NCBI RefSeq assembly: GCF_006345805.1
Contig: NC_043000.1
Coordinates: 118,978,001-119,042,000, forward strand
Reading direction: 5' to 3'
Origin: Octopus sinensis
Lineage: Eukaryota
DNA: 64,000 bases
Notes under the pieces: model-generated
Database searches by the model: none
What the model was told of the DNA's origin: nothing
What the model saw: only the letters and a program-made list of their open reading frames with translations
Made by a program: the position numbers and the translations under genes
Part shown: positions 13,061-35,929 of the stretch, piece after piece
Layout: each line of letters opens with the position of its first letter
Numbering within the stretch: the first letter of the stretch is position 1

Positions 13061-13340
13061 TTGCCAATGATGATGATGATGACTGGATTACCATACAGTA
13101 GTGAGCTGGCAGAACTGTTACTGCACTGGGAAAAAATACTTTGTGGCATTTCTTCCGCTTTTACATTCTGAGTTCAAATGCCACCCGGGTCGACTTTGCC
13201 TTTTATCCTTTTAAGGTTAATAAAATATAGTATGTAATCGACTAGTCCCCTTCCCAGAAATTGCAGGCCTTGTGCCAAAAATTGTAATCAAATATTAAAT
13301 TAACTTTACATTGCATTAACTCTACATAACTTTGTATCTT

Positions 13341-13555
13341 GCTACATGGAAGGTGTTTATAAGCCATTTGAGAAACGCACAAAAACCGTTAGATTCACTT
13401 CAACATTTAAATTTAATTTGTCAAAATATTTTCGTCACTTTGAAACTGCGACCTGTTCACTGACAAAACTTCGTGCTGCATCTTAAATGGCTTATAAACA
13501 CCTTCCACGCTGCAATTATTTTCGTTCCAGCACACGATCTCAGATCAAGTCACTC
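13341..13555 (-). mobile_element. Short non-autonomous insertion with 12-bp TSD, internal 23-bp inverted repeat and hammerhead-like motif
   Basis: TSD actttgtatctt at 13329-13340 and 13556-13567; perfect IR 13347-13369 / 13485-13507. Confidence 0.8.
13417..13467 (-). ncRNA. Type I hammerhead ribozyme-like motif with G3-C8 core variant
   Basis: UUUGUCA-GUGAACA-G-GUCGC(aguuucaaa)GUGAC-GAA-AAUAUU-U-UGACAAA: 7-bp stem I, 5-bp stem II, palindromic stem III. Confidence 0.65.
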
Positions 13556-13639
13556 ACTTTGTATCTTCTTTTTCATAAAATCTATAATATTCTACCTGTG
13601 TGCAAAAAAGAAAAAAAAATTATTTTTTTTCTGTTTCAG

Positions 13640-13783
13640 GTAAAGGCTATCACTCTCACTTCGGTCCCATTCGGAATTGAAAATGGTCTCATTTCAGCGA
13701 CACTGAAGAATAAACGATTCCAATTATTGAAAACTTTTCAGCAACAAGTTTCAGATATGTACAAAATCAGCAATGGTTCTTAG
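13640..13783 (+). CDS. ACSL: ACSL terminal coding exon (VKAITLTSVPFGIENGLISATLKNKR...NGS*)
   Basis: tttcag acceptor; F.IENGL.TPTLK.KR-like C-terminal ACSL motif; TAG stop. Confidence 0.93.
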   Translation, partial: VKAITLTSVPFGIENGLISATLKNKRFQLLKTFQQQVSDMYKISNGS

Positions 13784-19156: not shown

Positions 19157-20592
19157 ATGGAGACTTACGCGGGGGTCGCCGCAATGAAAAGCGATACGCC
19201 GCTGACAGTAAGAGAGGTGTTCTTTAAAAAAGAACAGCTAGAGGAATTTGAGAAATTCATTGAAAGGGAGGGTGACAGAGTGAAGCTGGTCCCCCCTGCT
19301 GAAGCAAAGGAGGAAAAAGAGGACAAAACTATAATTTATAGGACACAGGACACGACCACACGAAAGCTATCAAGAATAGCAATAGAAGACATAGAAAAAT
19401 GTCTGGACGACGTTATGAAAAAGGCTACCTTTGTGTGCAGAGGCAAGAAATATGGTACGGTGGAGGTGAGGTACGCAACAAAAGAAGTTGCGGCCTCGCT
19501 AGCTACCACCGTACTCAGAACCGAAAACTTCGTCATGTAGCCTACCTACAAGGGAAAAGAGGGGTACGGGTTAAAATCCCAAATATACCCCCAGATTTAA
19601 AACCAGAATGGCTGGTAACAGCCATCCTAGGATCAGCTGAGGAAGATATAGAAATTGGATCGATAAAGGAGACTAGCACAGTGAAATGGAAGGGATTCGG
19701 AGTAGAGATGTGGCTGACGACCACAAACAGCGATATAGATCGAATTCCCTTCCAAATAGAAGTAGAAGATGGTAGAACCCTCTCCGTAATCGTTGAGGGG
19801 AGGAAACCCAACTGTCATTTATGTGGGACAAGAGCTCACATTCAAAAAGAATGTCCGCTATACGAATTCGTGGCGGAGTGTGAAAAAGCAGAGGAAAACA
19901 AAAAAGAGAAAGAAAAAGAAACCGAAGAAGGGAACAATACTCTAAAGGAGAAAGAAAGCAAGGAAAAGGAAACAACGGTAAAAGGAAATAACAATACACA
20001 GAAGGAAAATGAAAGCAAAGGGAAGAAATTAATAGAAAAAGAACAAAAGTCACAGGTAATAGAGAAAGAAAAAGTAAGTAAAATAAAGGAATGAGAAAAA
20101 ACAGAAAAAAAACAAGAGAAGGAACAGAATCAAGAGAAAGGAAAGGCTGCTACACAAAAAGAAAAAGAAAAAACAGGAAAAGAACATACGACAGGCAAAG
20201 AACCAAAAAGACAAGAGAAGGAAAAAGAAAAGGAAAGCAAAAAGAGAGAAAGAGAAAAACCGAGAGAGGAAGGTAAAGAAGAAGTAAGTCAGAAGAGGAA
20301 AACTAAAGAAAACATAGGGTCAAATAAAAGATACAAATTTTACGGAACATTGGTACAATATAGACACTGTGGGGAGATGGAGGAATTAATTAGTGAAACG
20401 GAGGGTTATTCATGGGTCAGGATGGGCACGGAGTGGAAGGAAACAGGTGCACTGGTCCATGAAGACAACGCCGATGCGTTTATCGAGGCCGCTGGTATGA
20501 ACGTAACAAGACACACGAAGTGCCGACTGCTAAGGTACCCACGTGAGATGGAAAATTACAATGACCTAAAAAAGGTAATGGAACTAATTTAA
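19157..20592 (+). pseudogene. ORF1-only unit A (LINE ORF1/gag-like, CCHC knuckle), disrupted
   Basis: TVEVRYA RRM-like region, CHLCGTRAHIQKEC knuckle, K/E-rich linker, C-terminal domain; TAG at 19538 and frameshifts. Confidence 0.8.
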
Positions 20593-21105
20593 AATTATAA
20601 GAAAACAAAAAAGAAAAAGAGAATTTGGAAAGACTTTTGTTTATTTCAAATGTATTTTGAAATCTTAAAGATGTATTGCGAAAGCTTTATATGTGAATTT
20701 GTGAAAACAATTTTTTGTAATTGATAATGTATTTTGAAATTATATTTTGAAATGTATTGAAATGTATTGCGAAATGCTGAAAAATGAATTTGTTACTTTT
20801 GAAAACATTATAAAATGTAATTAAAAACGACGAAATGTAACCACCTGATTTCGGGGATCGGTTGGGGCATTACACCACATTTATACATATTTCATATTTC
20901 ATTATTTTTTTTTCCCCGATTGTACTGTCCCCTCTATGTTCGCCCCTTGTGGGTAGTAATAAAATCATTGCAGTCTTAATCGAGTGTGTGTTGTTAGTTG
21001 TGACCAGACGGTGAATTTTTTCTGTGTAAATTGATTTGATATCGCGCGAGGCGTTTGCCTCCACGTGTGGAAACCTTCCGAAGAAGGTGTATTGACCCTC
21101 TAGTC

Positions 21106-22514
21106 ATGGCGACTTACGCGGGGGAACCGGAAAAAATAACGATTCGTCGATAATTGTAAGGGAGGTGTTCTTTGAGAAGGAGAAACTCAAAGAATATGAA
21201 AAGCTTTTCAAAAGGGAGGGTGATAGCGTGAAGCTAATCCCCCCGCGAAAGCAAAAGAGGATAAAGAAAGCAAGACGGTGACATATAGAACCCAAGACAA
21301 GAATACGAAGAAACTGGCAAGAGTGGAGATAGACGAAATTGAGAAATGTCTGGGAGACATAATGGGGAAAATAACCTACGTGAGTAGAGGCAAGAAATTT
21401 GGTACGGTGGAGGTGAGATGTGCAACGGAGGAAATTGCGGCCTCACTGGCTACCACCGTACTAAGAGCCGAAAAATTCACAATGTGGCCCTCATATAAGG
21501 GAAGAAGAGGGGTCCGGGTTAAAATCCCGAATATACCCCCAGAAGTGAAAATAGAATGGCTGGCAACAGCTATTCTAGGAGCAGCAGAAGAGGAAGTGGA
21601 GGTGGAATCAATTAAGGAGTCCAACGCGGTAAACTGGAGAGGATATGGGTTAGAATTGTGGCTTATGGCCACAAAAGAGGATATTGAAAGGTTTCCCTAC
21701 AGAATTGAAATTGAAGAGGAAAAAACCCTCAGCGTAATTGTAGAGGGGAGAAAACCAAACTGTTACTTGTGTGGGACAAGGGGGCACATTAAAAAAGAGT
21801 GCCCGTTATATGAATTTGTAGCGGTGTGCGAGCAGGAACTTGAAGAAAAGAAGAATACTATAAATGAGAAAGAAAGCATAGAAAAGGAAACAAAACAACA
21901 AGAGAAAGGAAATAATAAGTCAATGAAGGAGAAAGAAATAATAGAAAAAAAGAAATAGAACCAAAACAGAGTCAGGAAAAAAAAAGGAAAAAGAAACAAT
22001 AGGAAAAAAACAAGAGAGAGATCAGAATCAAACGAAAAGAAAAGACGGCATACAAAAGGAAAAAGAAAATACAGGAAAGGAACATAAAGCACGAGAGAAA
22101 GAGAAAACAGACAAAGAGCCAAAAAGACAAGAGAAGGAAGGAGAAAGAAAAGAAGGCAAAAAGAGAGAAAGAGAGAAACAAAGAGAGGAGAACAGGGAAG
22201 AAATAAGCCCGAAAAGGAAGATGAAGGAAAACGCAGGATGGAAACAAGATTACTATTACTACAAGTTAGTAACCTACCATTTCTGCCCTGTAATGAATGA
22301 CTTGACAAGCAAAACGGAGGGACATATATGGGTCAACAGGATGACCGACCGGTGGCAGGAGACTGCTCTAATCCCCGAAGAAAGTGCCGCTGAGTTCCTC
22401 AGAGCTGCTGGGGAAAATGTAATATTTTACACGAAGGTTCGAGTAAGAGAGCGGCTGCCTGAGGATTCAGTGATGGACTTCAGAGGAGTAGAAAAAATCA
22501 TAGAATATATGTAA
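21106..22514 (+). pseudogene. ORF1-only unit B, paralogue of unit A, disrupted
   Basis: KKFGTVEVRCATEE, CYLCGTRGHIKKEC knuckle; same domain order and 3' tail as unit A. Confidence 0.8.
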
Positions 22515-23035
22515 AATTGTGAGAGGAAAAAAAAAAGAAAAAATTTGGTGAAATATATGTGATAAAACTGACGAAAATGTAACCTCTTGATTCCGGGGAT
22601 CGAGTGGACATTTACATCTCATTGTAAATATTCTTTCATATGCCATTATTACTTTTATTTTTTCCTTTTCTTGTCATTCGCTTTCTTATTTTAAGTTCCC
22701 CGATTGTATTGTCCCCTCTATGTTCGCCCTTGTGGGTAGTAATAAAATCATTCCAGTCTGTTATACGCCAGTCTGTTTTGACATTTGCTGCTACTTTGTT
22801 AATACCGGTTTGTTAATTTAATTACTGTTACTTTGATTGATATATTGTGTCTTTTGTATAAGACTGTCATTAGCCTTCGCGCGAAGGCTACGTATTTAAT
22901 TCCCCCCTGCAGGGGAATTATTGTGGAACATTTTGTGTGGAACACATTTAAAAATCTACACAAAAGGCTTGCGAAGCCTGAATTTTTTGAAGGCTTGTGA
23001 AAGCTAATTGAAATGCTTATTAAGCCATTTTCGAG

Positions 23036-24306
23036 ATGGATACCCCCATCTCCTATTCACCTGTGTCAGGTGAAGAAAGCTCACCGGCGGTGTCACCGAA
23101 AGCAGAAGCCCCAGCTAAGAAGTTTTCTGAAGTTGCGGGCAAGAAGCTGAAGACAATTAAAACAGAAAGAAGCAGCCTGGAAAAATACACAGCATGTCTA
23201 AAAAGGAAGGTACAGAAGTATCAGTAACGCCGGACGTCAGTAAGATGGAAGAGGTGGAAAAAAAAAGGATTATTTATAAAACGTACAACTCAACAACGAA
23301 GTCCATTCAAAGAGTGGAAGAAAAGAAAATCGAGTGTTGCCTAAAGACAATATGGCAGGAAATAACTTATATAAATCGTGGAAGAAGATTTGGAACGGTA
23401 GAGGTGAGGTTCAGGTCAGAAGAGATAGCTAAAAAGCTATCAACTGAACCACTAAAAGCCGATAATATAGTCCTCCTCCCCCTGTACAGAGGCAGAAGGA
23501 CCTCAAAAATCAAAATAAGAAACATTCCCCCAGAGGCAGATGCCACATGCCTGGTGGCGGCAGTCATGTTAGGCCTGGAGGAAAAAAATCAATATCCTCC
23601 AGGCTACAGTAGAGGAGGAGGAGCATTGGCAAGGCCAATGCATTTCAATAGTGATACAAACGGAAGTACAGACATTGGAAGAAATTCCAGAGACATTAAG
23701 GATCAGCGAGGAGGAGAGGGTGATAGTGTTTGTGGAGGGCAGAAAGCCGAGGTGCTTCGGCTGCGGTAAAAAGGGGCACGTGAGAGCGGAGTGCCAACCT
23801 AGACCGCAGGAAGCAGCACCGCCAGAAAAAGAAAAAACAAGAAAAGAGAAAACAGAAGAGAAAACACCAGAAACTACAGAAACCAAAGAAGCAACAGAAA
23901 CAACAAGCGGCGAAGAAAAGGAAAAAGAGGAGGGGTGGTCAAAAATTACCAAAAAAAAAAACGGAAAACAGAAACCACCCCTCAGAAAGAGAGCCAAAAA
24001 AAGAGGAAAGAAGTGACGAATACATTTATGGCCATTAAGGCTGCCAACAACAGGCTAATTAACGTTTTGGCAGCCATGGCCAAGGTGGAGAAAATTAAAA
24101 AAACAAAAGACTGTATTGTTTATAGAATAGGCGGGAAGGATTACGGACGGATAAAATCCGAATTCTTTCACGACGTGGGCCCTCTGAGATTGGATATATC
24201 TCCATATTTATACGAGGGCCTGCGTCGGACTCCCCCACGAGCCCAGGAAAAAAATAAAAGTGAAGAAGAAGAAAAACAAGTCGAACAAGTCGAACCACTG
24301 ATATAA
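23036..24306 (+). pseudogene. ORF1 of a Tx1/L1-clade LINE (frameshifted)
   Basis: RRFGTVEVRF, CFGCGKKGHVRAEC knuckle, spread over three frames. Confidence 0.85.
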
Positions 24307-24314
24307 GGTAAGTC

Positions 24315-27300
24315 ATGGATTGCATTTTTGTTGGTTGTTTAAATGTGCGCGGCCTGGGATCAAGCTGGAAGCAAGGTCGCTTCCTTAATGATATCAGGTC
24401 GCGTAATTTGGATGTTATTGTTGCTACAGAAACCCGGTTAGAGGGGCCAAAAGGTCTACTCCCGCTGTTTGACGGCTACGAGAGTTTTTTCTCTCCGGCC
24501 AGTCCTACAGGCGGGGGTGGGGTGTTGGTCCTATTAAAAAGAAACCGGGTTTTTGAGAAAAAGTTATTTTTTTCAGACCCAGAAGGTAGGCTGGTCGTCA
24601 TGGATTTGACGTTCAGTAGCTGTAAAGTTATCAGACTGGATGCAATTTACACACCCAACCATAAAGGGCAAAGTGATTATTTTCGAGAACTGGAAAACTT
24701 TCTTGGTACTTCGCATTCATTAGTTATGCTAGGAGACTTTAACACAATTTGCAAAGCGGATGTAGATTGTGTTGGCTCGCGTCCAGATAGAAAAGGTAAC
24801 ATTGGCTTCCTGGAACTGCTAAGCCGCTTTGAGCTAGCAGATCCTTATAGGTTGGAATTTCCGAACGCTCCATTGTGGACATGGTCAAACAGCGACGGAT
24901 CTTCCAGGTCATACATAGATAGGATACTAATTAGAAAAGTAGACAGAAAAATAGCTAAGTGTCCACAGTTTTACCTGGTCAGCTACAGTGATCATAAAAT
25001 GGTCACCTGTAAGCTTGACATAGATAAGGTTAAAAATAGAGGCTCCGGTTACTGGAAACTTAATACGTCCCTTTTGGCGATTAAGGAGTACAGAGACCGG
25101 ATTAGGACTATAATTCAGAGGGCGCTATCTGGTGCCATCATTAATAACAAATGGTGGTATGCCCTCAAGCGAGCCATCAAATTCGAGTCTATTAGATATA
25201 GCATAGGATTAGTGGCTAGAGAGGCTAGGAGGGAATCTACTCTAGTTAGGGAATTAGAGGAAGCCTTGAAATCTGGCTCTGCGGTTCAGGTGGCGGCCAA
25301 GAGACTGGCGTTAAACCAGCACCTCGAGGCCAAACACATGGGCTGCATTGTCAGGGTTAGGATCCGCGCAATGGGTTGTGAAGGAATCAACGCTGTGAGA
25401 TGGGCCCGAGTGGTGGAAGCTCAGCGTGGTAACGACGCCACGATTCGATCTATGACGAACCAACAAGGTGAGTTGATAAACGAGCCCGAGGAGATGTATG
25501 AGGCCTTTCAGGAGCACTTCGCTCAGCTTTTCGGTGGGTGCGGCGGACTGGATAGGAGGAGGGCCTTTACGGACCTCCTCGACGGGCTGCCGCGCTTATC
25601 GGGGCGAGATGCGGAGGACTGTGAAGGGCCAATCACGCCTGGGGAGGTGGTTGAGGCGATGGCGGACTGCGGCGCGGGCAAGGCGCCGGGTTTAGATGGT
25701 CTACCCTATAAGTTATATAAGAGTATGCCAGACTTGTTCGGGCACCTACTGGCGGAGGTCTATGCGAACTGGAAGCAGAACGGGTTCATACCCAGATCTG
25801 TGCGCCGGGGAGTAGTGACACTCGTCAGAAAGGACCCGAGCAAGGAGGAGTGCATTGATAATTTCAGGCCCATCACTCTGCTAAACACAGAGTTGAAGAT
25901 TTTGGCCAAAGTGTTATCGAAAAGATTGGCGCGTGTCGCGGATGGTTTGATCGGGGAGGCAGACATGTGCCGTTCCCGGCAGAACCATTCAGGATAATCT
26001 CCATCTTATGCGGTACACTATAGAGGGGTTTAATAGTGATTTTAGCAAGGGTGGGGCACTGGTCCATTTAGACCAATCTAAAGCATTCGATAGGGTCGAC
26101 CATCGCTACCTGGTATCTGCCCTGGCACAGTTCGGGCTGGGCCTAGGCTTCCTCAGGTGGATTATCCAAATTTACGACAACATCGACTCGGTAGTTCGGG
26201 TGAACGGCTTCTTGTCGAAGCCGTTCAACATCAAGCGCTCGGTTCGTCAAGGGTGTCCGCTCTCCCCGCTTTTGTACGTGATGGCTCTTGAGCCATTACT
26301 GCGAAAACTGAGCGGCATCCCGAGACAGCCAGGTAGTGGAAAATCGGTGTCAGCGTACGCGAATGACATCACCATCATCGTAACCGAAATGGATCACCTA
26401 CGTAAAGTAGGCAAGGCCATACAGGTTTACGAGACGGTGACAGGAGCAAAAGTTAATCGTGAAAAGTCAGTCGGCTTGTAACTCGGCACCTGGAGAGGCA
26501 AGTCGATGCCTCCTGACAGCGTCGTAGAACGTTGGACGGAGGGTCCGATTAAGTTGCTAGGGGTTTGGTTCGGTCCTGACCTCCAAATAGAGAAGAATTG
26601 GGGCGAGGTATCGAGCAGGGTGGCTGCAGTAACCAAGACCTGGTCTTGGCGGTGGCTATCCCTGAAAGGGAGGGCGGAGGTAGCCAATGTGTTTATCGCA
26701 TCGGTTATCACCTACCGCCTTTCCGTCGTTCCTTGCCCTGATTCGTGGTTGATCAAGTTGGAAAGACAGCTCTTCTACTTCTTGTGGAAGGGCGGGAAAC
26801 CACTTGTGAAACGCTCTACTTGCTGTCAACAATCGTTAAAGGGTGGGCTAGGGATGCCTTGGTTGATGATGCGCAGACATGCGCTGAGGTTAAGACATCT
26901 GTGGCTCTACCTGGATGGTGAACGGGTGTGGTCTCCGCTAGCAAAACTGATGTTTCCCAAGTTCACTAGTTTCGGTGGATGGGAAACCTGGCTGAATCGT
27001 AGATCGAAACTGGGCACATGGTACACGGAGTGTCGCAAGGCTCTCCTGCTATCCCGTCGATCGTGCAACGCCTGCGGTGGGGGTTCCACCACATTCTTCT
27101 ATAGAGGGTTGGTAGAGGCGGAATGTGAAGATACCTTGGGGGAAACCCTAGGTCTCGACGATAATCAGCTGGCCAGTCTGTTCCGACGTACGTTCGAGCC
27201 GAAGACACTGGACAACTTCCAGAAGTCTCTGGCATGGCAATGCTACAGAGGAGCTCTACCTGTTCGGAATAAACTCGCAAGGCACGGTGGCCAAGACAGT

Positions 27301-27708
27301 CCGATATGTCCAAGATGCGAGCGGGATAGGGAAACCGTCCCGCACGCTATTGTTCATTGTTCGGTCGTGTCTGAGGTGTGGGTTTATGCCGAACAGCTGT
27401 TGTCAAGCACACGAAGAGTACAGCTGTCGACTGAGTCTATTACAAAAATTGACCCACCAGATTTCCTCGCGAAAGAAGGTAAGAATTGTTTTCTCGTTGT
27501 AGTAGCAATTGCGAAAGAGGTGATATGGAAGACGAGAATGAAAAGTTTACGGTCAGGCAAGTTCATCTCCGGCCCTGGTTTGATGAATTACTTCATCTTT
27601 CACCTGAAAAGGAAGATATGGCTGGAGAGAAAATGCCTGACAAAGAGAGTGTATGAAGAACGATGGAAAGATGTAGCACGAAAGTTGCGAGTGGATGATA
27701 CCACATAA
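24315..27708 (+). pseudogene. ORF2 of a Tx1/L1-clade LINE: APE endonuclease + RT + C-terminal Cys-rich domain
   Basis: LNVRGL, GDFN, SDH; KAPGLDG, RPITLLN, DQSKAFDRV, QGCPLSP, YAND(D); CPRC...HAIVHC; frameshift near 25960 and TAA at 26479. Confidence 0.92.
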
Positions 27709-28309: not shown

Positions 28310-28520
28310 GTATGTATATGTATGTATATATATATGTGTATATATATATATATATGTATATATATGTATATATATATATGTATATATATATGTGTATATA
28401 TATATGTATATATGTATGTATATATATATGTGTGTATATATATATGTATATATATGTGTGTATATATATATATATGTATATATATATGTGTGTATGTATA
28501 TATATATGTATTTTTATAAT
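28110..28520. repeat. (TA)n/(TATG)n compound microsatellite
   Basis: Low-complexity tract. Confidence 0.95.
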
Positions 28521-28529
28521 TTTTTATAT

Positions 28530-31500
28530 TTTATCTAGTTTCAGCTCACGAGCTGTGGCCATGCTGGGGCACCGCCATTTGGTTTGCTACATGATTTTAC
28601 TTCACGAATGCTTTTTAGCAACTGCCATTTGGTGCAAGAGAGAGTTCGATGCAGCTGCCCTCATCTGCACCTCCTGCCGAGAAGTTGGTTCATCCGAGAC
28701 ACCTGACAGGAAGAGATCCAGTACTACTTTAAAGACATCCGCATCCAACCCATGCAGGTCCCTCAGGTTCTTCGGGAGGATATTGAAGAGCTGTGGGTCT
28801 CTGAAGCCCAGGCTATCACAGTATCTTGTCCTACATCTTGATGGCAAATTTGGAGTCGTTGGCACCACGCAGTGGCGCCCAGTTCTGGCATTTGTGTAAC
28901 TCTCGATGCCAAAGTTTGGGACAAGTCCTTCCAGGATCTTCCAGATGTGTATTATGGCATATCTTTCTCGCCTACGCTCCAACGAATAGAGTTTTAATCT
29001 CTTGAGTCTTTCCCAGTAGCTTACATGCCGCACAGAAGCTATCTTCTTCGTTTAGCTTCATTGGATCGCCTCAAGTTCTGTGATCAACTTGACACTGGAT
29101 GGTGACCATAGCTGAGAGCAATAGTCAAAGTGGCTTAGGACAAGTGTCCTCCAGAGGACCATCGTGGTTTCTTGTTCTCTTGTTCTAAATGTTCAAAGAA
29201 TCCATCCGGCCAACCGTTTACATTTCATTGCGAATTTAGCAACATGTACATGAAAGGTTGCGTCATCACTCATGTAAATACCCAGGTCACGCACTGATTG
29301 TGCCTCTGGGATTGCAATCCCTCCAGGTCCAGTGTATTCATTGGGTATTGCATTTAGTCTTGCATGCTGATAGCATAAAGCATGAAACTTTTCAGCATTG
29401 AACTGCATGCTATTCTTTTCAGCCCACTTGTATATTTTGTCCAGCTCACATTGCAGGTGCTTAATGTCTTCAGGGTTCTGTATTGCCTGTGAAACTTTTG
29501 TATCATCTGCATAACTTTTGATCGTGGCTCTCTGCGAGGCTGGGGGCATGTCTGAGAGGGCCATTATGAGCAGTAGTGGTCCCAAAACAGTGCCCTGCGG
29601 AACACCGCTCACTATTTGCGTGTTAATGGAAGTGGCCTCAATGGCTACTACCACCTGAATTTTATCCTTCAGAAAGTCATGAAGCCATCCTCCCAATTTT
29701 CCAACTATGCCAAGATCACGCAGTTTGTGACATATCATTCCATGATCGACTTTATCAAAGGCCTTTGCAAAGTCGAGATATATCACTTCCACATTTGAGT
29801 GGTTGAGCAGTCGTTTCAGCACCCAGTCATAGTGTTGTAGGAGCTGAGTTAAGCAGCTTCTTCCTGGTCGGAAACCATGTTGGGTGTCAGGCAGCAAGTC
29901 ATTTTCTTCAAGGAAGGTGATTAGTTTCCTTCTGACTATTCGTTCCATGACCTTGCTGATGTGTGAGGTGAGAGAGATAGGTCTGTAGTTCTTGGCCTCC
30001 GCTCTGCTACCTCCTTTATGAATAGGGCATATTTTACCTTCCTTCAGTTTTCTTGGAAGTTTGCCAGCTGCAAGTAAGCTCTGAAAGAGGAACTGCAGTG
30101 ATCTTGCTAGGACTCTCTTACATACTTTTAGGAGGATTGCCGGGAATCCATCGGGGCCAGTAGCTGAGTTTGTTTTCATTTCATCTATAGCCTTTATTAC
30201 ATCGTCTTCCTTTATATTGATGTAATCAATCATCGCTGCCTCTGATTCTATATCTGCAGTGGTAAAGAAGTCAGTTGGATTGCTGATTTGGAAATGCCCA
30301 AGGGGTGGAGTGAAAACACTCTTGAATTGCTCATTTAGTATTTCACTTACCCTAATTGGATTTCCTGTGAGTGTGCCATCCTTTTCAAGGAGTGGCCCTA
30401 TCCTACAGTTCACCGTAGCTGTTTCTTTGGCATACCTGTAGAAAGCTCTGAGGTTAGATTTTATGTTGTCTATAGCCCAGGCTTCTTTGTCTGCTCTTTC
30501 CTTTTCATGGGAGAGTTGCAGACAATTTTCAATTTCCAACAGTTTTATTTTCAGGCGGGACTTTTCACTGCTTTCAATTTGTTTGTTTAGGCGATTTGAA
30601 ACTTTTGTACGCCGTCTCATTAGAATTTTCCTCTCTCTGGGGATTTCGTTCTTGTGTACAGTGGCCTCTCTCTCTGGGACACATTTGTAGCATATGGCTT
30701 GCATTAAATACATGAATTGTTGGAGTTTCATATCGATGTCTGGTGAGGAGAGACATTCAGGCCAGTTTTGTTTGAGGATCTCTTTCTCAATTTGTTTCCA
30801 GTTTGCCTAATGGAAGTTCAAGCTGGAAAGATTCTGAGAGTTTCTTGTAGGCTGCATGTCCATGCTTTCCTTTGGCCCGTACATGGTCAGCTCTACCATG
30901 TTGTAATCCGAGAGTAGTGTCGGTGTCACTTTCACATTATGGATGAGATCCATATTATTTGTGAAGCAGAGATCCAGTATGTTTCCTGCCCTGGCTGGTT
31001 GGAGTATTACTTGCTCCATGTACAGGGTGTTGATAAGGTTCAGGAGAGACCTCGCCTGTCCTCGTTCACATCATGTCATTCCTGGGAGAGAAAGGCCCTC
31101 GGGCCATCTGACATTGGGTAGATTGAAGTCTCCCATAAGAAGTACACTTATGTGTTGTTCTAATGTGACTAGAACTTCTTCTATTTTTATAAGGCAGTCT
31201 TCAAACTTGCCTACATGGCTTGGGGCATCTGGAGGGCGATATGTAGCACACACAACTACACCAAGTTGCCTTATATGAACAATTAGTGTGTCACACACCG
31301 AGTTTGAGTATGAGAAATGGCCCTGGGTGTGAGATCCTCACTGATGTACATAGCAACTCCTCCATGACTCCTTTCGTTTCTGTCGGTCCGTAGTACAACA
31401 TACTGTGGTATGTGTAATTCCGCATCTGCTATGTTCGGTTTCAGGTGTGTTTCCGTAAGTGCTATGCATAAGGCTTGATTGCATGCAACAAAGTCTGTCA

Positions 31501-34845: not shown

Positions 34846-35832
34846 CTATGCAGATGATACAAAAGTTTCACAGGCAATACAGGACCCTGAAGACACTAAG
34901 CACCTGCAATGTGAGCTGGACAAAATATACAAGTGGGCTGAAAAGTATAGCATGCAGTTCAATGCTGAAAATTTCAAGCTTTATGCTATCAGCATGCAAA
35001 ACTAAATGCAATACCCAATGAATACACTGGACTTGGAGGGATTGCAATCCCAGAGGCACAATCAGTGCGTGACCTGGGTATTTACATGAGTGATGACGCA
35101 ACCTTTCATGTACATGTTGCTAAATTCGCAATGAAATGTAAACGGTTGGCCGGATAGATTCTTTGAACATTTAGAACAAGAGAACAAGAAACCACGATGG
35201 TCCTCTGGAGGACACTTGTCCTAAGCCACTTTGACTATTGCTCTCAGCTATGGTCACCATCCAGTGTCAAGTTGATCACAGAACTTGAGGCGATCCAACG
35301 AAGCTACACGAAGAAGATAGCCTCTGTGCAGCATATAAGCTACTGGGAAAGACTCAAGAGATTAAAACTCTATTCGTTGGAGCGTAGGCGAGAAAGATAT
35401 GCCATAATATACATCTGGAAGATCCTGGAAGGACTTGTCCCAAACTTTGGCATCGAAAGTTACACAAATGCCAGAACTGGGCGCCACTGCGTGGTGCCAA
35501 CGACTCCATATTTGCCATCAAGATGTAGGACAAGATACTGTGATAGCCTGGGCTTCAGAGGCCCACAGCTCTTCAATATCCTCCCGAAGAACCTGAGGGA
35601 CCTGCATGGGGTGGATGCGGATGTCTTTAAAGTAGGACTGGATCTCTTCCTGTCAGGTGTCCCGGATGAACCAACTTCACGGCAGGAGGTGCAGATGAGG
35701 GCAGCTGCATCGAACTCTCTCTTGCACCAAATGGCAGTTGCTAAAAAGCATTCGTGAAATAAAATCATGTAGCAACAACTAATGGCAGTGCCCCAGCATG
35801 GCCACAGCTCGTGAGCTGAAACTAGATAAAAA
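34846..35832 (+). mobile_element. 5'-truncated CR1-group LINE family A
   Basis: SYADDT... through ORF 35197-35757 and tail; near-identical to the reverse complement of 28530-29520. Confidence 0.9.
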
Positions 35833-35929
35833 AAATACATATATACATGTATGTATATGTATATGTATATATATATGTATGTATATATATATATATGTAT
35901 ATATATATATGTATATATATATGATAAAC

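What the first reader, a model, noticed from the sequence alone, without database searches (positions are those of the whole stretch)
13341..13567. Hammerhead ribozyme with the C3-G8 catalytic-core pair swapped to G3-C8, in a 215-bp TSD-flanked retroelement
Seen: the minus strand 13467-13417 reads UUUGUCA GUGAACA G GUCGC-aguuucaaa-GUGAC GAA AAUAUU U UGACAAA. That gives a perfect 7-bp stem I, a 5-bp stem II, the GAAA half-core, a palindromic stem III and a UUU site, i.e. type I hammerhead topology. The other half-core is GUGAACA instead of CUGANGA. Established: positions 3 and 8 form a Watson-Crick pair in the active fold, and a compensatory swap is tolerated in vitro, whereas single changes are strongly deleterious. 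Inference: a simultaneous C3G plus G8C change is unlikely from decay and suggests a functional natural variant that CUGANGA pattern searches would miss. The motif is enclosed by a perfect 23-bp inverted repeat, and the insert has a 12-bp TSD. It lies antisense, 84 bp upstream of the last ACSL exon.
Basis: partly seen in the sequence, partly recalled or inferred. Interest (0 to 1): 0.9.

Follow-up and report, generated by a model that had tools for sequence, protein, structure and literature searches.

The report
Penelope-type hammerhead motif with swapped core pair
A 215-bp retrotransposon fragment in the last intron of an acyl-CoA synthetase gene carries a hammerhead-ribozyme-like motif of the minimal kind found in Penelope-like elements. 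One catalytic-core base pair is swapped (G3-C8 instead of C3-G8), which would be a new natural core variant, but it rests on a single copy and nothing shows that it cleaves.

Summary
The minus strand 13467-13417 reads as a type I hammerhead scaffold: a 7-bp helix I, GUGAACA, one unpaired G, a 5-bp helix II, GAAA, the palindrome AAUAUU, U17, then helix I. A 23-bp perfect inverted repeat and a 12-bp target-site duplication flank it. The motif is not chance: among 720 composition-matched decoy cores, the only hits with helix I of 6 bp or more are this motif and a canonical CUGAUGA hammerhead at 36286-36349.

The better name is a minimal hammerhead (min-HHR) of Penelope-like elements (PLEs). It has the family's unpaired nucleotide between A9 and 10.1, the G10.1-C11.1 pair and a palindromic helix III. 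The insert also has PLE anatomy: two head-to-head 5'-truncated copies, a 40-nt tail at one end only, a short duplication and an AT-rich target.

Natural covariation at positions 3-8 is already published, as U3-A8. A C3G/G8C double mutant of a PLE hammerhead partly regains cleavage, and cleavage is dispensable for PLE insertion in vitro.

No second copy could be retrieved, because the host genome (probably a cephalopod) is not in any searchable collection. Family-level G3-C8 and catalytic activity therefore remain untested. I rate it a plausible new variant of a known kind, of moderate interest.

The parts
13329..13340 (.). Left copy of the 12-bp target-site duplication, ACTTTGTATCTT
   Evidence: Exact direct repeat with 13556-13567. 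It abuts the left arm of the inverted repeat.
13341..13480 (-). Copy in the hammerhead sense (about 140 nt). Interpreted as the 3'-terminal part of a 5'-truncated Penelope-like element without the tail. It contains the hammerhead motif plus 83 nt downstream of the predicted cut.
   Evidence: Sequence. Hammerhead helices I and II are the minimum-free-energy fold in this context. The 83-nt distance from the cut to the 3' end compares with 85-92 nt in the Anolis PAc element (PMC11167929).
13417..13467 (-). Hammerhead-like motif (type I, min-HHR architecture). Helix I is 13467-13461 paired with 13423-13417. The 5' core GUGAACA is 13460-13454, with G3 at 13460 and C8 at 13455. The unpaired G is 13453. 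Helix II is 13452-13448 paired with 13438-13434, with loop 13447-13439. G12 A13 A14 is 13433-13431. The palindrome AAUAUU is 13430-13425. U17 is 13424, and the predicted cut lies between 13424 and 13423.
   Evidence: No Rfam match.
13339..13373 (.). Left arm of the inverted repeat, which is the 3' terminus of the hammerhead-sense copy. It contains the AC-rich stretch UAUAAACACC within a terminal stem-loop.
13481..13515 (+). Right arm of the inverted repeat. Interpreted as a second, inverted, heavily 5'-truncated copy holding the same 3' terminus, joined head-to-head to the first copy.
   Evidence: 31/35 complementary to 13339-13373, with a perfect 23-bp core. Head-to-head inverted truncated copies are typical of PLE insertions (PMC8557442, PMC3846280).
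13516..13555 (+). A 40-nt one-sided extension between the right arm and the right target-site duplicate. Interpreted as the PLE 'tail'.
   Evidence: Sequence. The arms end at 13515 and the duplication starts at 13556. PLE tails are 30-40 bp, sit at one end only, and lie at the 3' end of one inverted copy (PMC8557442, PMC3846280, PMC11167929).
13556..13567 (.). Right copy of the 12-bp target-site duplication
13640..13783 (+). Context only: the last coding exon of an ACSL-like gene (VKAITLTSVPFGIENGLISATLKNKRFQLLKTFQQQVSDMYKISNGS*), preceded by a polypyrimidine tract and AG.
   Evidence: The ACSL assignment rests on my own recognition of the C-terminal motif. The database search returned nothing.

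Best explanation
The 215-bp insert is a short, non-coding product of Penelope-like-element (PLE) retrotransposition. It consists of two 5'-truncated copies of an element's 3' end joined head-to-head: about 140 nt on the minus strand, and 35 nt plus a 40-nt tail on the plus strand. It went into an AT-rich intron site and created a 12-bp duplication.

The longer copy keeps the element's hammerhead. This is of the minimal PLE type: an open helix I, one unpaired nucleotide after A9, a G10.1-C11.1 pair, no helix III hairpin of its own, and a palindrome that can only build helix III between two RNA copies. Its core pair is G3-C8 instead of C3-G8.

Shown: the sequence anatomy and its non-randomness.

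Inferred:
(a) The PLE origin.
(b) G3/C8 was already present in the transcribed source element rather than arising at this locus.
(c) If the motif cleaves at all, it does so weakly, as a dimer and/or with help from the element's protein, in transcripts of the source element.

At this locus the motif is a solitary copy antisense to the host gene. It most likely does nothing as a ribozyme.
For: Motif significance:
- Only two hammerhead-valid scaffolds exist in the window, and the decoy and Markov nulls are far below 1.
- Features not used in my descriptor also match the published min-HHR consensus (PMC4209133). These are a single unpaired nucleotide between 9 and 10.1, the G10.1-C11.1 pair, and palindromic 15.2-16.2 with loop 3.
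- Hammerhead helices I and II are the minimum-free-energy fold, or within 0.7 kcal/mol of it, in the 140-nt and 215-nt contexts.

Insert anatomy against PLE hallmarks:
- High 5' truncation and an adjacent inverted truncated copy forming inverted repeats.
- A 30-40-bp tail at one end only (PMC8557442).
- A 31-bp tail at the 3' end of one inverted pLTR, and duplications of 8-10 bp in Adineta vaga (PMC3846280).
- Both DNA strands are cleaved and extended, the target is AT-rich, and reverse transcription starts 85-92 nt downstream of the hammerhead cut in the Anolis PAc element (PMC11167929). Here the distance is 83 nt.

Other elements excluded: no tRNA-like head, no ORF, and the inverted repeat is not flush with the duplication on the right, which argues against a MITE.

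Genomic context:
- The closest named relative of a LINE protein from the window is from the octopod Argonauta hians.
- Octopus vulgaris has active Penelope families (PMC13282606).
- The giant squid genome has 235 Rfam type I hammerheads (PMC6962438).
- A canonical type I hammerhead sits in a partial-tandem unit elsewhere in this window.

G3-C8 plausibility: a C3G/G8C double mutant partly restores cleavage in a PLE hammerhead (PMC11167929), and a natural U3-A8 covariant occurs about 1,300 times in Schistosoma mansoni (PMC4209133).
Against: - Only one copy was seen. No other copy is in the window and none was retrievable elsewhere, so there is no family consensus, no covariation and no link to a full-length PLE with RT and GIY-YIG ORFs.
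- No PLE ORF was seen in this window. Four of the long RT/endonuclease ORFs were scanned against Pfam and look like LINEs; the others were judged by eye.
- No Rfam hammerhead model scores the motif even at E<=10. Those models do not represent min-HHRs, and they also missed the canonical motif at 36293.
- Helix I (7 bp) is longer, and helix II (5 bp) shorter, than the S. mansoni min-HHR families (4-5 and 7-8 bp).
- Three of the four arm mismatches cluster in the outer 8 nt, so the exact copy boundaries and the tail length (40-48 nt) are uncertain.
- The whole 215-mer could instead be one hairpin-shaped unit.
- G3.U17 wobble competes with the active fold.
Confidence: 0.6

Rival explanations
1. 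A selected, catalytically competent natural G3-C8 hammerhead. Under this reading G3-C8 is the consensus of an active cephalopod PLE or retrozyme family. Its transcripts self-cleave at U17, as dimers or with protein help, and the core pair was kept by compensatory evolution. This is the reader's interpretation, refined; it adds to the best explanation rather than replacing it.
For: - Eleven of 13 core positions are canonical, and the two that differ restore a Watson-Crick pair.
- All helices are intact.
- The insertion looks too little diverged for two post-insertion hits, so the swap was in the source RNA.
- The double mutant is partly active (PMC11167929, PMC3884650).
- The natural U3-A8 variant shows the pair can covary (PMC3088659, PMC4209133).
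Against: - Single copy only, with no cleavage data.
- Hammerhead cleavage is not needed for PLE insertion in vitro, and no RNA-seq ends were found at the hammerhead site in Anolis (PMC11167929).
- Canonical min-HHRs already cleave poorly (PMC4209133).
- The swap is only a partial rescue.
- U17 can pair with G3. Published remarks say G3-C8 works better when position 17 cannot pair with G3 (PMC3884650).
Confidence: 0.28
2. Chance resemblance. The insert is some other short retroposed or foldback element, and its internal hairpins happen to frame GUGAACA...GAAA.
For: - Rfam finds no hammerhead.
- AT-rich, repeat-rich sequence yields hundreds of thousands of two-helix scaffolds.
- The local fold z-score is only -1.9.
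Against: - The decoy-core test on the same window gives about 0.003-0.02 expected hits per core.
- The Markov null gives fewer than 0.002.
- Three additional unselected min-HHR features match: the unpaired nucleotide, G10.1-C11.1 and the palindrome.
- The insert independently shows PLE hallmarks.
Confidence: 0.17
3. A decayed copy of a canonical C3-G8 hammerhead. Under this reading the two core changes are random substitutions at this locus or in a dead lineage, and have no functional meaning.
For: - Most genomic min-HHRs are solitary, heterogeneous relics of truncated PLEs (PMC4209133).
- The arms differ at 4 of 35 positions, so some divergence cannot be excluded.
Against: - The duplication is 12/12 and the central repeat 23/23 (26/27 over the adjoining run).
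- By my own estimate, exactly two hits at positions 3 and 8, both to the complementary base, with every other core base and all 12 helix pairs intact, has a probability of about 2e-4 even at roughly 6% divergence.
Confidence: 0.07
4. A MITE or other DNA transposon, or a hairpin small-RNA precursor, defined by the 23-bp terminal inverted repeat.
For: - A long perfect inverted repeat.
- Rfam long-hairpin plant microRNA families match weakly (E 0.002-0.008, 29 and 24 bits against gathering scores of 211 and 200).
Against: - The right arm is separated from the duplication by 40 nt.
- A 12-bp duplication is atypical for cut-and-paste families.
- No other copy is in the 64 kb.
- The Rfam hits are far below threshold and reflect only the hairpin shape.
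Confidence: 0.05

Closest known systems
Minimal hammerheads (min-HHRs) in the pseudo-LTRs of metazoan Penelope-like elements (Cervera & de la Pena 2014, PMC4209133)
   Same: - Type I topology.
- One unpaired nucleotide between A9 and 10.1.
- A G10.1-C11.1 pair.
- GAAA followed by a palindromic 15.2-16.2 and loop 3, with no stable helix III, implying action as a dimer.
- Mostly found as solitary motifs in truncated copies.
- A natural covariant of the 3-8 pair exists (U3-A8).
   Different: - The core pair here is G3-C8, which was not found among natural hammerheads in the papers searched.
- Helix I is longer (7 bp against 4-5) and helix II shorter (5 bp against 6-8).
- Location in a pLTR of a coding PLE is not shown.
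PLE insertion architecture (Arkhipova 2013, PMC3846280; Craig 2021, PMC8557442; Frangieh 2024, PMC11167929)
   Same: - Strong 5' truncation.
- Head-to-head inverted copy.
- A 30-40-bp tail at the 3' end of only one copy.
- A short duplication and an AT-rich target.
- The hammerhead lies about 85-92 nt upstream of the reverse-transcription start (83 nt here).
   Different: - No RT/GIY-YIG ORF and no direct pLTR pair. The whole insert is 215 bp.
- The duplication is 12 bp, against 8-10 bp in the rotifer examples.
Metazoan non-LTR retrozymes (Cervera & de la Pena 2020, PMC7229834; Li et al. 2026 preprint, 10.64898/2026.07.22.740005)
   Same: - A non-coding unit in the 170-400 nt size range with low GC.
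- A type I hammerhead with a weak palindromic helix III.
- Duplications longer than 4 bp when present.
- Solo monomers occur.
- These elements are thought to derive from PLE pLTRs.
   Different: - Not tandem here, so two cleavage sites for excising a circle are absent.
- The inverted-repeat-plus-tail anatomy is not a described retrozyme feature.
- No expression or circular-RNA evidence.
Engineered C3G/G8C hammerheads (Martick & Scott 2006 and Przybilski & Hammann 2007, both as cited in PMC3884650 and PMC11167929)
   Same: The same double swap, which partly restores cleavage lost in either single mutant, including in a PLE hammerhead.
   Different: Those are laboratory mutants. Here the swap is in a genomic, retrotransposed copy, and it is combined with U17, which can wobble-pair with G3.

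Membership tests
Hammerhead ribozyme (general) | Three helices around a junction, with helix I and helix II flanking the 5' core box | tested here: met
   Helix I has 7 Watson-Crick pairs and helix II has 5 pairs (one G.U). This fold is the local minimum-free-energy structure.
Hammerhead ribozyme (general) | 5' core box C3 U4 G5 A6 N7 G8 A9 | tested here: not met
   The box reads G U G A A C A. Positions 3 and 8 are both changed, to a complementary G-C pair.
Hammerhead ribozyme (general) | 3' core G12 A13 A14, an A15.1-U16.1 pair, and H17 (not G) at the cleavage site | tested here: met
   GAA, then A...U, then U17. Caveat: U17 can wobble-pair with G3.
Hammerhead ribozyme (general) | Stable helix III hairpin (type I) | tested here: not met
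   Only A15.1-U16.1 closing AUAU is possible within one molecule. The palindrome AAAAUAUUUU could pair between two copies at -4.6 kcal/mol.
Hammerhead ribozyme (general) | Match to a curated covariance model (Rfam hammerhead families) | tested here: not met
   No hit at gathering score in the window, nor at E<=10 in 13250-13650. The canonical motif at 36293 is also missed, so the test has low sensitivity here.
Hammerhead ribozyme (general) | Site-specific self-cleavage | not testable with these tools
   Needs an in vitro transcription assay or RNA end mapping.
PLE min-HHR (PMC4209133) | [quoted passage not shown] | tested here: met
   G at 13453.
PLE min-HHR (PMC4209133) | Conserved G10.1-C11.1 pair | tested here: met
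   G at 13452 pairs with C at 13434.
PLE min-HHR (PMC4209133) | Palindromic 15.2-16.2 and loop 3 in place of helix III | tested here: met
   AAUAUU at 13430-13425.
PLE min-HHR (PMC4209133) | Short helix I (4-5 bp) and long helix II (6-8 bp) | tested here: inconclusive
   The values here are 7 bp and 5 bp. The published sizes vary between genomes.
PLE min-HHR (PMC4209133) | Occurs in consensus families with compensatory changes, some inside pLTRs of coding PLEs | not testable with these tools
   No second copy is in the window. The source genome is absent from the collections.
Penelope-like element insertion | ORF with RT and GIY-YIG endonuclease | tested here: not met
   No open frame in the insert. 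Four long RT/endonuclease ORFs of the window scanned against Pfam are LINE-type (RVT_1, Exo_endo_phos); the other RT-like ORFs were read by eye only. The insert can at most be a truncated or non-autonomous copy.
Penelope-like element insertion | Adjacent inverted 5'-truncated copy giving flanking inverted repeats | tested here: met
   Arms 13339-13373 and 13481-13515, with a 23-bp perfect core.
Penelope-like element insertion | An optional 30-40-bp tail at one end only, at the 3' end of one inverted copy | tested here: met
   40 nt at 13516-13555, between the right arm and the duplication. There is none on the left.
Penelope-like element insertion | Short target-site duplication in an AT-rich target | tested here: met
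   A 12-bp exact duplication, ACTTTGTATCTT.
Non-LTR retrozyme (PMC7229834) | Tandem repeats of 170-400 bp, each carrying a type I hammerhead | tested here: not met
   A single 215-bp unit with no tandem copy.
MITE / cut-and-paste DNA transposon | Terminal inverted repeats directly flanked on both sides by the duplication | tested here: not met
   The right arm ends 40 nt before the duplication.
tRNA-derived SINE | tRNA-like head and an A-rich or simple-repeat 3' tail | tested here: not met
   ARAGORN finds nothing, and neither end has an A-rich or simple-repeat tail.

The most novel reading that the evidence does not exclude
G3-C8 is the consensus core of a still-active cephalopod Penelope-like or retrozyme family whose RNA self-cleaves. 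That would be the first natural hammerhead with the C3-G8 pair inverted. It would show that nature uses both a transition-type (U3-A8) and a full strand-swap version of the catalytic pair. It would also imply that descriptor and Rfam surveys systematically undercount hammerheads in PLE-rich genomes.
Probability: 0.25. Interest if true: 0.6.

Novelty: new variant of a known kind. Interest (0 to 1): 0.45.

Why it matters
If the G3-C8 core is shared by a family and cleaves, it would be natural, evolutionary confirmation that positions 3 and 8 need only pair, beyond the known U3-A8 case. It would also argue for adding swapped cores to hammerhead search descriptors. CUGANGA patterns and the Rfam models both missed this motif, and Rfam also missed the canonical hammerhead in the same window.

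It bears on an open question too: why do Penelope-like elements keep hammerheads when cleavage is dispensable for insertion in vitro? A compensatory change would be evidence of selection on the fold.

If it is a one-off, the locus is an ordinary truncated retrotransposon in an intron.

Tried and rejected
- **Rfam.** Searched the whole window at gathering score and two local slices at E<=10. There was no hammerhead hit for either motif. The only hits in the finding's slice were far-below-threshold plant microRNA families driven by the long hairpin, which I rejected as artefacts of shape.
- **Second copy in the window.** blastn with word size 7 found none.
- **Public DNA collections.** An 18-mer from the inverted repeat against metagenome contigs gave 13 loci. 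A 17-mer from the hammerhead against bacterial and archaeal genomes gave 120 or more loci. All are isolated seed matches of 19-26 nt at roughly the number expected by chance for collections of this size (my own estimate), and none has both arms. These scans were poorly suited to an animal repeat.
- **Protein route to the host genome.** The 47-aa last exon found no homologue. Exact look-ups of the 98-aa ORF spanning the element and exon, and of a 549-aa LINE ORF, found no contig. The best LINE homologues are only 55-62% identical, and the best named one is from Argonauta hians. The source species is therefore not in the collections, and an orthologous empty site or family copies could not be fetched.
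- **Searches not run.** I ran no further search on the element's 46-aa ORF, or fetch bulk DNA from distant cephalopods, because the chance of hitting this young family was too low for the cost.
- **Homology between the two hammerhead loci.** They share only GGTCGCA, which sits in different structural positions and is plausibly chance.
- **Dimer co-folding.** It gave a trivial extended duplex and was uninformative.
- **Supplementary files.** The min-HHR, PLE and octopus repeat papers held no usable sequences.
- **Rejected readings.** The tRNA-SINE, MITE and coding readings were all rejected.
Full report

Yes. Reading 13467-13417 on the minus strand gives UUUGUCA GUGAACA G GUCGC AGUUUCAAA GUGAC GAA AAUAUU U UGACAAA. 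In hammerhead numbering this is:
- helix I, 7 Watson-Crick pairs;
- the 5' core box, with G at position 3 and C at position 8;
- one unpaired G;
- helix II, 5 pairs starting with G10.1-C11.1;
- G12 A13 A14;
- A15.1...U16.1 inside a palindrome;
- U17, then the return strand of helix I.

The topology is type I. The predicted cut lies between 13424 and 13423.

The perfect inverted repeat is 23 bp, inside 35-nt arms at 13339-13373 and 13481-13515 that match at 31/35. The 12-nt direct repeat ACTTTGTATCTT lies at 13329-13340 and 13556-13567. The insert is therefore 13341-13555, or 215 bp. The last exon of an ACSL-like gene starts at 13640 on the plus strand, 84 bp after the insert, so the motif is antisense to the gene.

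**2. Is it more than chance?**

The other is a fully canonical one on the plus strand at 36286-36349.

Three nulls agree that neither is expected by chance:
- In 600 windows simulated from a third-order Markov model of this sequence, the swapped core appeared 0.0017 times per window with helix I of at least 5 bp, and never at 6 bp or more.
- A stricter null keeps the real sequence, with all its microsatellites and hairpins, and replaces the core boxes by all 720 same-composition permutations. These decoys gave 4 hits in total. The only two with helix I of 6 bp or more were the two hammerhead-valid cores.
- With a looser descriptor, 13 of 718 decoys scored at all.

Three features not in the descriptor also match what min-HHRs show: the G-C identity of the first helix II pair, the palindrome after GAAA, and exactly one unpaired base after A9.

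The hammerhead helices are the minimum-free-energy fold of the 140-nt context and lie within 0.7 kcal/mol of it in the 215-nt context. I conclude that the motif derives from a hammerhead. About 0.17 is left for coincidence, to allow for post hoc selection over many windows and many possible variants.

**3. What is the element?**

Cervera and de la Pena (PMC4209133) defined minimal hammerheads in PLE pseudo-LTRs. Their features:
- type I topology;
- a highly conserved G10.1-C11.1 pair;
- no real helix III, but palindromic 15.2-16.2 and loop 3, so that two copies must pair to make an active dimer;
- thousands of mostly solitary copies per genome, attributed to truncated PLEs.

Arkhipova and colleagues describe the insertions themselves:
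- PLE insertions show strong 5' truncation, often with an inverted 5'-truncated copy immediately adjacent, which produces flanking inverted repeats. A 30-40-bp 'tail' is present at only one end (PMC8557442).
- In Adineta vaga a 31-bp tail sits at the 3' end of one inverted pLTR, and duplications are 8-10 bp (PMC3846280).

Frangieh et al. (PMC11167929) studied the purified Anolis PAc protein:
- It cleaves and extends both DNA strands at AT-rich sites.
- Reverse transcription starts at two internal sites, and the interval between them is the tail.
- The main start lies 111-118 nt into the ORF, while the hammerhead cut is at +26, so the start is 85-92 nt downstream of the cut.

The insert here fits point by point:
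- a hammerhead-sense copy of about 140 nt (13480 down to 13341) that ends 83 nt after the predicted cut;
- a head-to-head inverted copy of the same terminal 35 nt (13481-13515);
- a 40-nt extension on that copy only (13516-13555);
- a 12-bp duplication in AT-rich intron sequence.

The last 40 nt of the hammerhead-sense copy also fold into a stem-loop whose 3' strand is AC-rich (UAUAAACACC). This loosely recalls the AC-rich stem-loop at the PAc initiation site.

Alternatives fit worse:
- **MITE.** A MITE needs the duplication flush with both repeats, and here it is not.
- **SINE.** There is no tRNA-like head and no A-rich or simple-repeat 3' end.
- **Coding element.** There is no ORF.
- **Retrozyme.** A non-LTR retrozyme in the strict sense is a tandem array (PMC7229834), and this is a single unit. 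However, retrozymes are now argued to be non-autonomous derivatives of PLE pLTRs, and solo monomers are common (10.64898/2026.07.22.740005).

The exact class, truncated autonomous PLE or PLE-mobilised non-autonomous element, cannot be decided from one copy.

**4. Host and context**

The window is packed with LINE-type elements carrying RT and AP-endonuclease domains, and with TA/TG microsatellites. The best named homologue of one LINE ORF is from the octopod Argonauta hians, at 62% identity, and all other hits are 56% or below. The ACSL exon peptide and two exact-protein look-ups found nothing.

The source is therefore probably a cephalopod whose genome is not in the searchable collections. 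That is why no family copies or orthologous empty site could be obtained.

Cephalopods do carry the relevant elements. Octopus vulgaris has 30 Penelope families with intact-looking copies (PMC13282606). The giant squid assembly has 235 Rfam Hammerhead_1 hits (PMC6962438).

**5. The G3-C8 swap: what can and cannot be said**

*Established (literature).*
- C3 and G8 pair in the active fold, and the pair was confirmed by exchange experiments (PMC3884650).
- In a PLE hammerhead, C3G and G8C each abolish cleavage, and the double mutant partly restores it (PMC11167929).
- Natural covariation to U3-A8 occurs in several hammerheads (PMC3088659) and in about 1,300 S. mansoni PLE motifs (PMC4209133).
- In my literature searches, G3-C8 appears only as a laboratory variant.

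*Inferred here.* The duplication is 12/12 and the central repeat 23/23 (26/27 over the adjoining run), so little has changed since insertion. Two post-insertion hits, exactly at positions 3 and 8, both to the complementary base, with everything else intact, have a probability of about 2e-4 by my estimate. The swap was therefore already in the RNA that was reverse-transcribed. Eleven of 13 core bases and all helix pairs are preserved alongside a compensatory change. That suggests, but does not prove, selection on the fold in the source lineage.

*Against function.*
- Hammerhead-dead mutants insert normally in vitro, and no RNA ends map to the hammerhead site in Anolis (PMC11167929). Retrotransposition therefore does not certify catalysis.
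- Canonical min-HHRs cleave poorly and only as dimers or with an engineered helix III (PMC4209133).
- The PAc hammerhead needs its protein.
- The swap is only a partial rescue.
- With G at position 3, U17 can wobble-pair and extend helix I, as the minimum-free-energy fold does. A G3-C8 variant was reported to work better when position 17 cannot pair with G3 (PMC3884650).

At this locus the motif is a single copy on the strand antisense to the host gene, so a role here is unlikely.

**6. Verdict**

It is best filed as working like, and probably belonging to, the PLE min-HHR class, inside a truncated head-to-head PLE-type insertion.

The G3-C8 core would be a new natural variant of a known kind. 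The principle that the 3-8 pair covaries in nature is already known. Both the claim of function and the claim that G3-C8 is a family trait are untested.

Scores: confidence in the PLE-derived hammerhead reading 0.6; probability that a G3-C8 family exists and cleaves about 0.25; interest 0.45.

Noticed in passing
window 36286-36349 (+), within 35925-36486: A fully canonical type I hammerhead: AGUCUUG CUGAUGA, then helix II (GCAU...GUGC with an inner hairpin), GAAA, a 4-bp helix III with loop CAGG, A17, then CAAGACU. It lies in a 477-bp unit whose first ~85 nt recur at its 3' end (35925-36009 against 36402-36486, 80/85 identical). This is a partial tandem like a pLTR or retrozyme, inserted in a (TA)n/(TATG)n microsatellite. 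Rfam does not detect it even at E<=10. The hammerhead fold is 3.1 kcal/mol above the local minimum free energy.
   Followed up: partly
window 13339-13515 (+ strand, the sense of the ACSL pre-mRNA): If the intron is transcribed, the inverted repeat forms a duplex of about 27 bp, nearly perfect, 125-300 nt upstream of the last exon's 3' splice site. This is a possible substrate for ADAR or Dicer, and a possible influence on splicing, in a lineage known for heavy RNA editing. This is pure inference.
   Followed up: no
window 13340-13515 (-): Rfam plant microRNA precursor families MIR8562 and MIR841 match at E 0.002-0.008, but at 29 and 24 bits against gathering scores of 211 and 200. This is an artefact of any long hairpin, not a microRNA.
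   Followed up: yes
window 13640-13783 (+): The ACSL-like last-exon peptide (47 aa) shares no three 5-residue words with anything among 5.8 billion proteins. The best LINE homologues are at most 62% identical, from Argonauta hians. The source species and its close relatives seem absent from the protein collection.
   Followed up: partly
window 19157-24016 (+), upstream of 24315-27708: Three successive, related gag-like ORFs with a CCHC knuckle (about 19399-20094, 21278-21958 and 23194-24016) precede a LINE ORF with endonuclease and RT domains. This may be a tandem triplication of ORF1, or nested copies.
   Followed up: no
window 28435-28659, 35700-35920, 37248-37450, 45108-45288: At least four copies (81-86% identical) of the same LINE 3' end, each abutting TA-rich microsatellites. 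This family appears to target or generate (TA)n arrays.
   Followed up: no
window 35940-35975 and 36417-36452 (+): The repeated terminal segment of the 477-bp unit contains GAAAUGACUGAUGUCCCUCUUAGCGUGAGG. This resembles a hammerhead 5' half (CUGAUG plus a hairpin) but has no following GAAA box. It may be a relic half-core.
   Followed up: no
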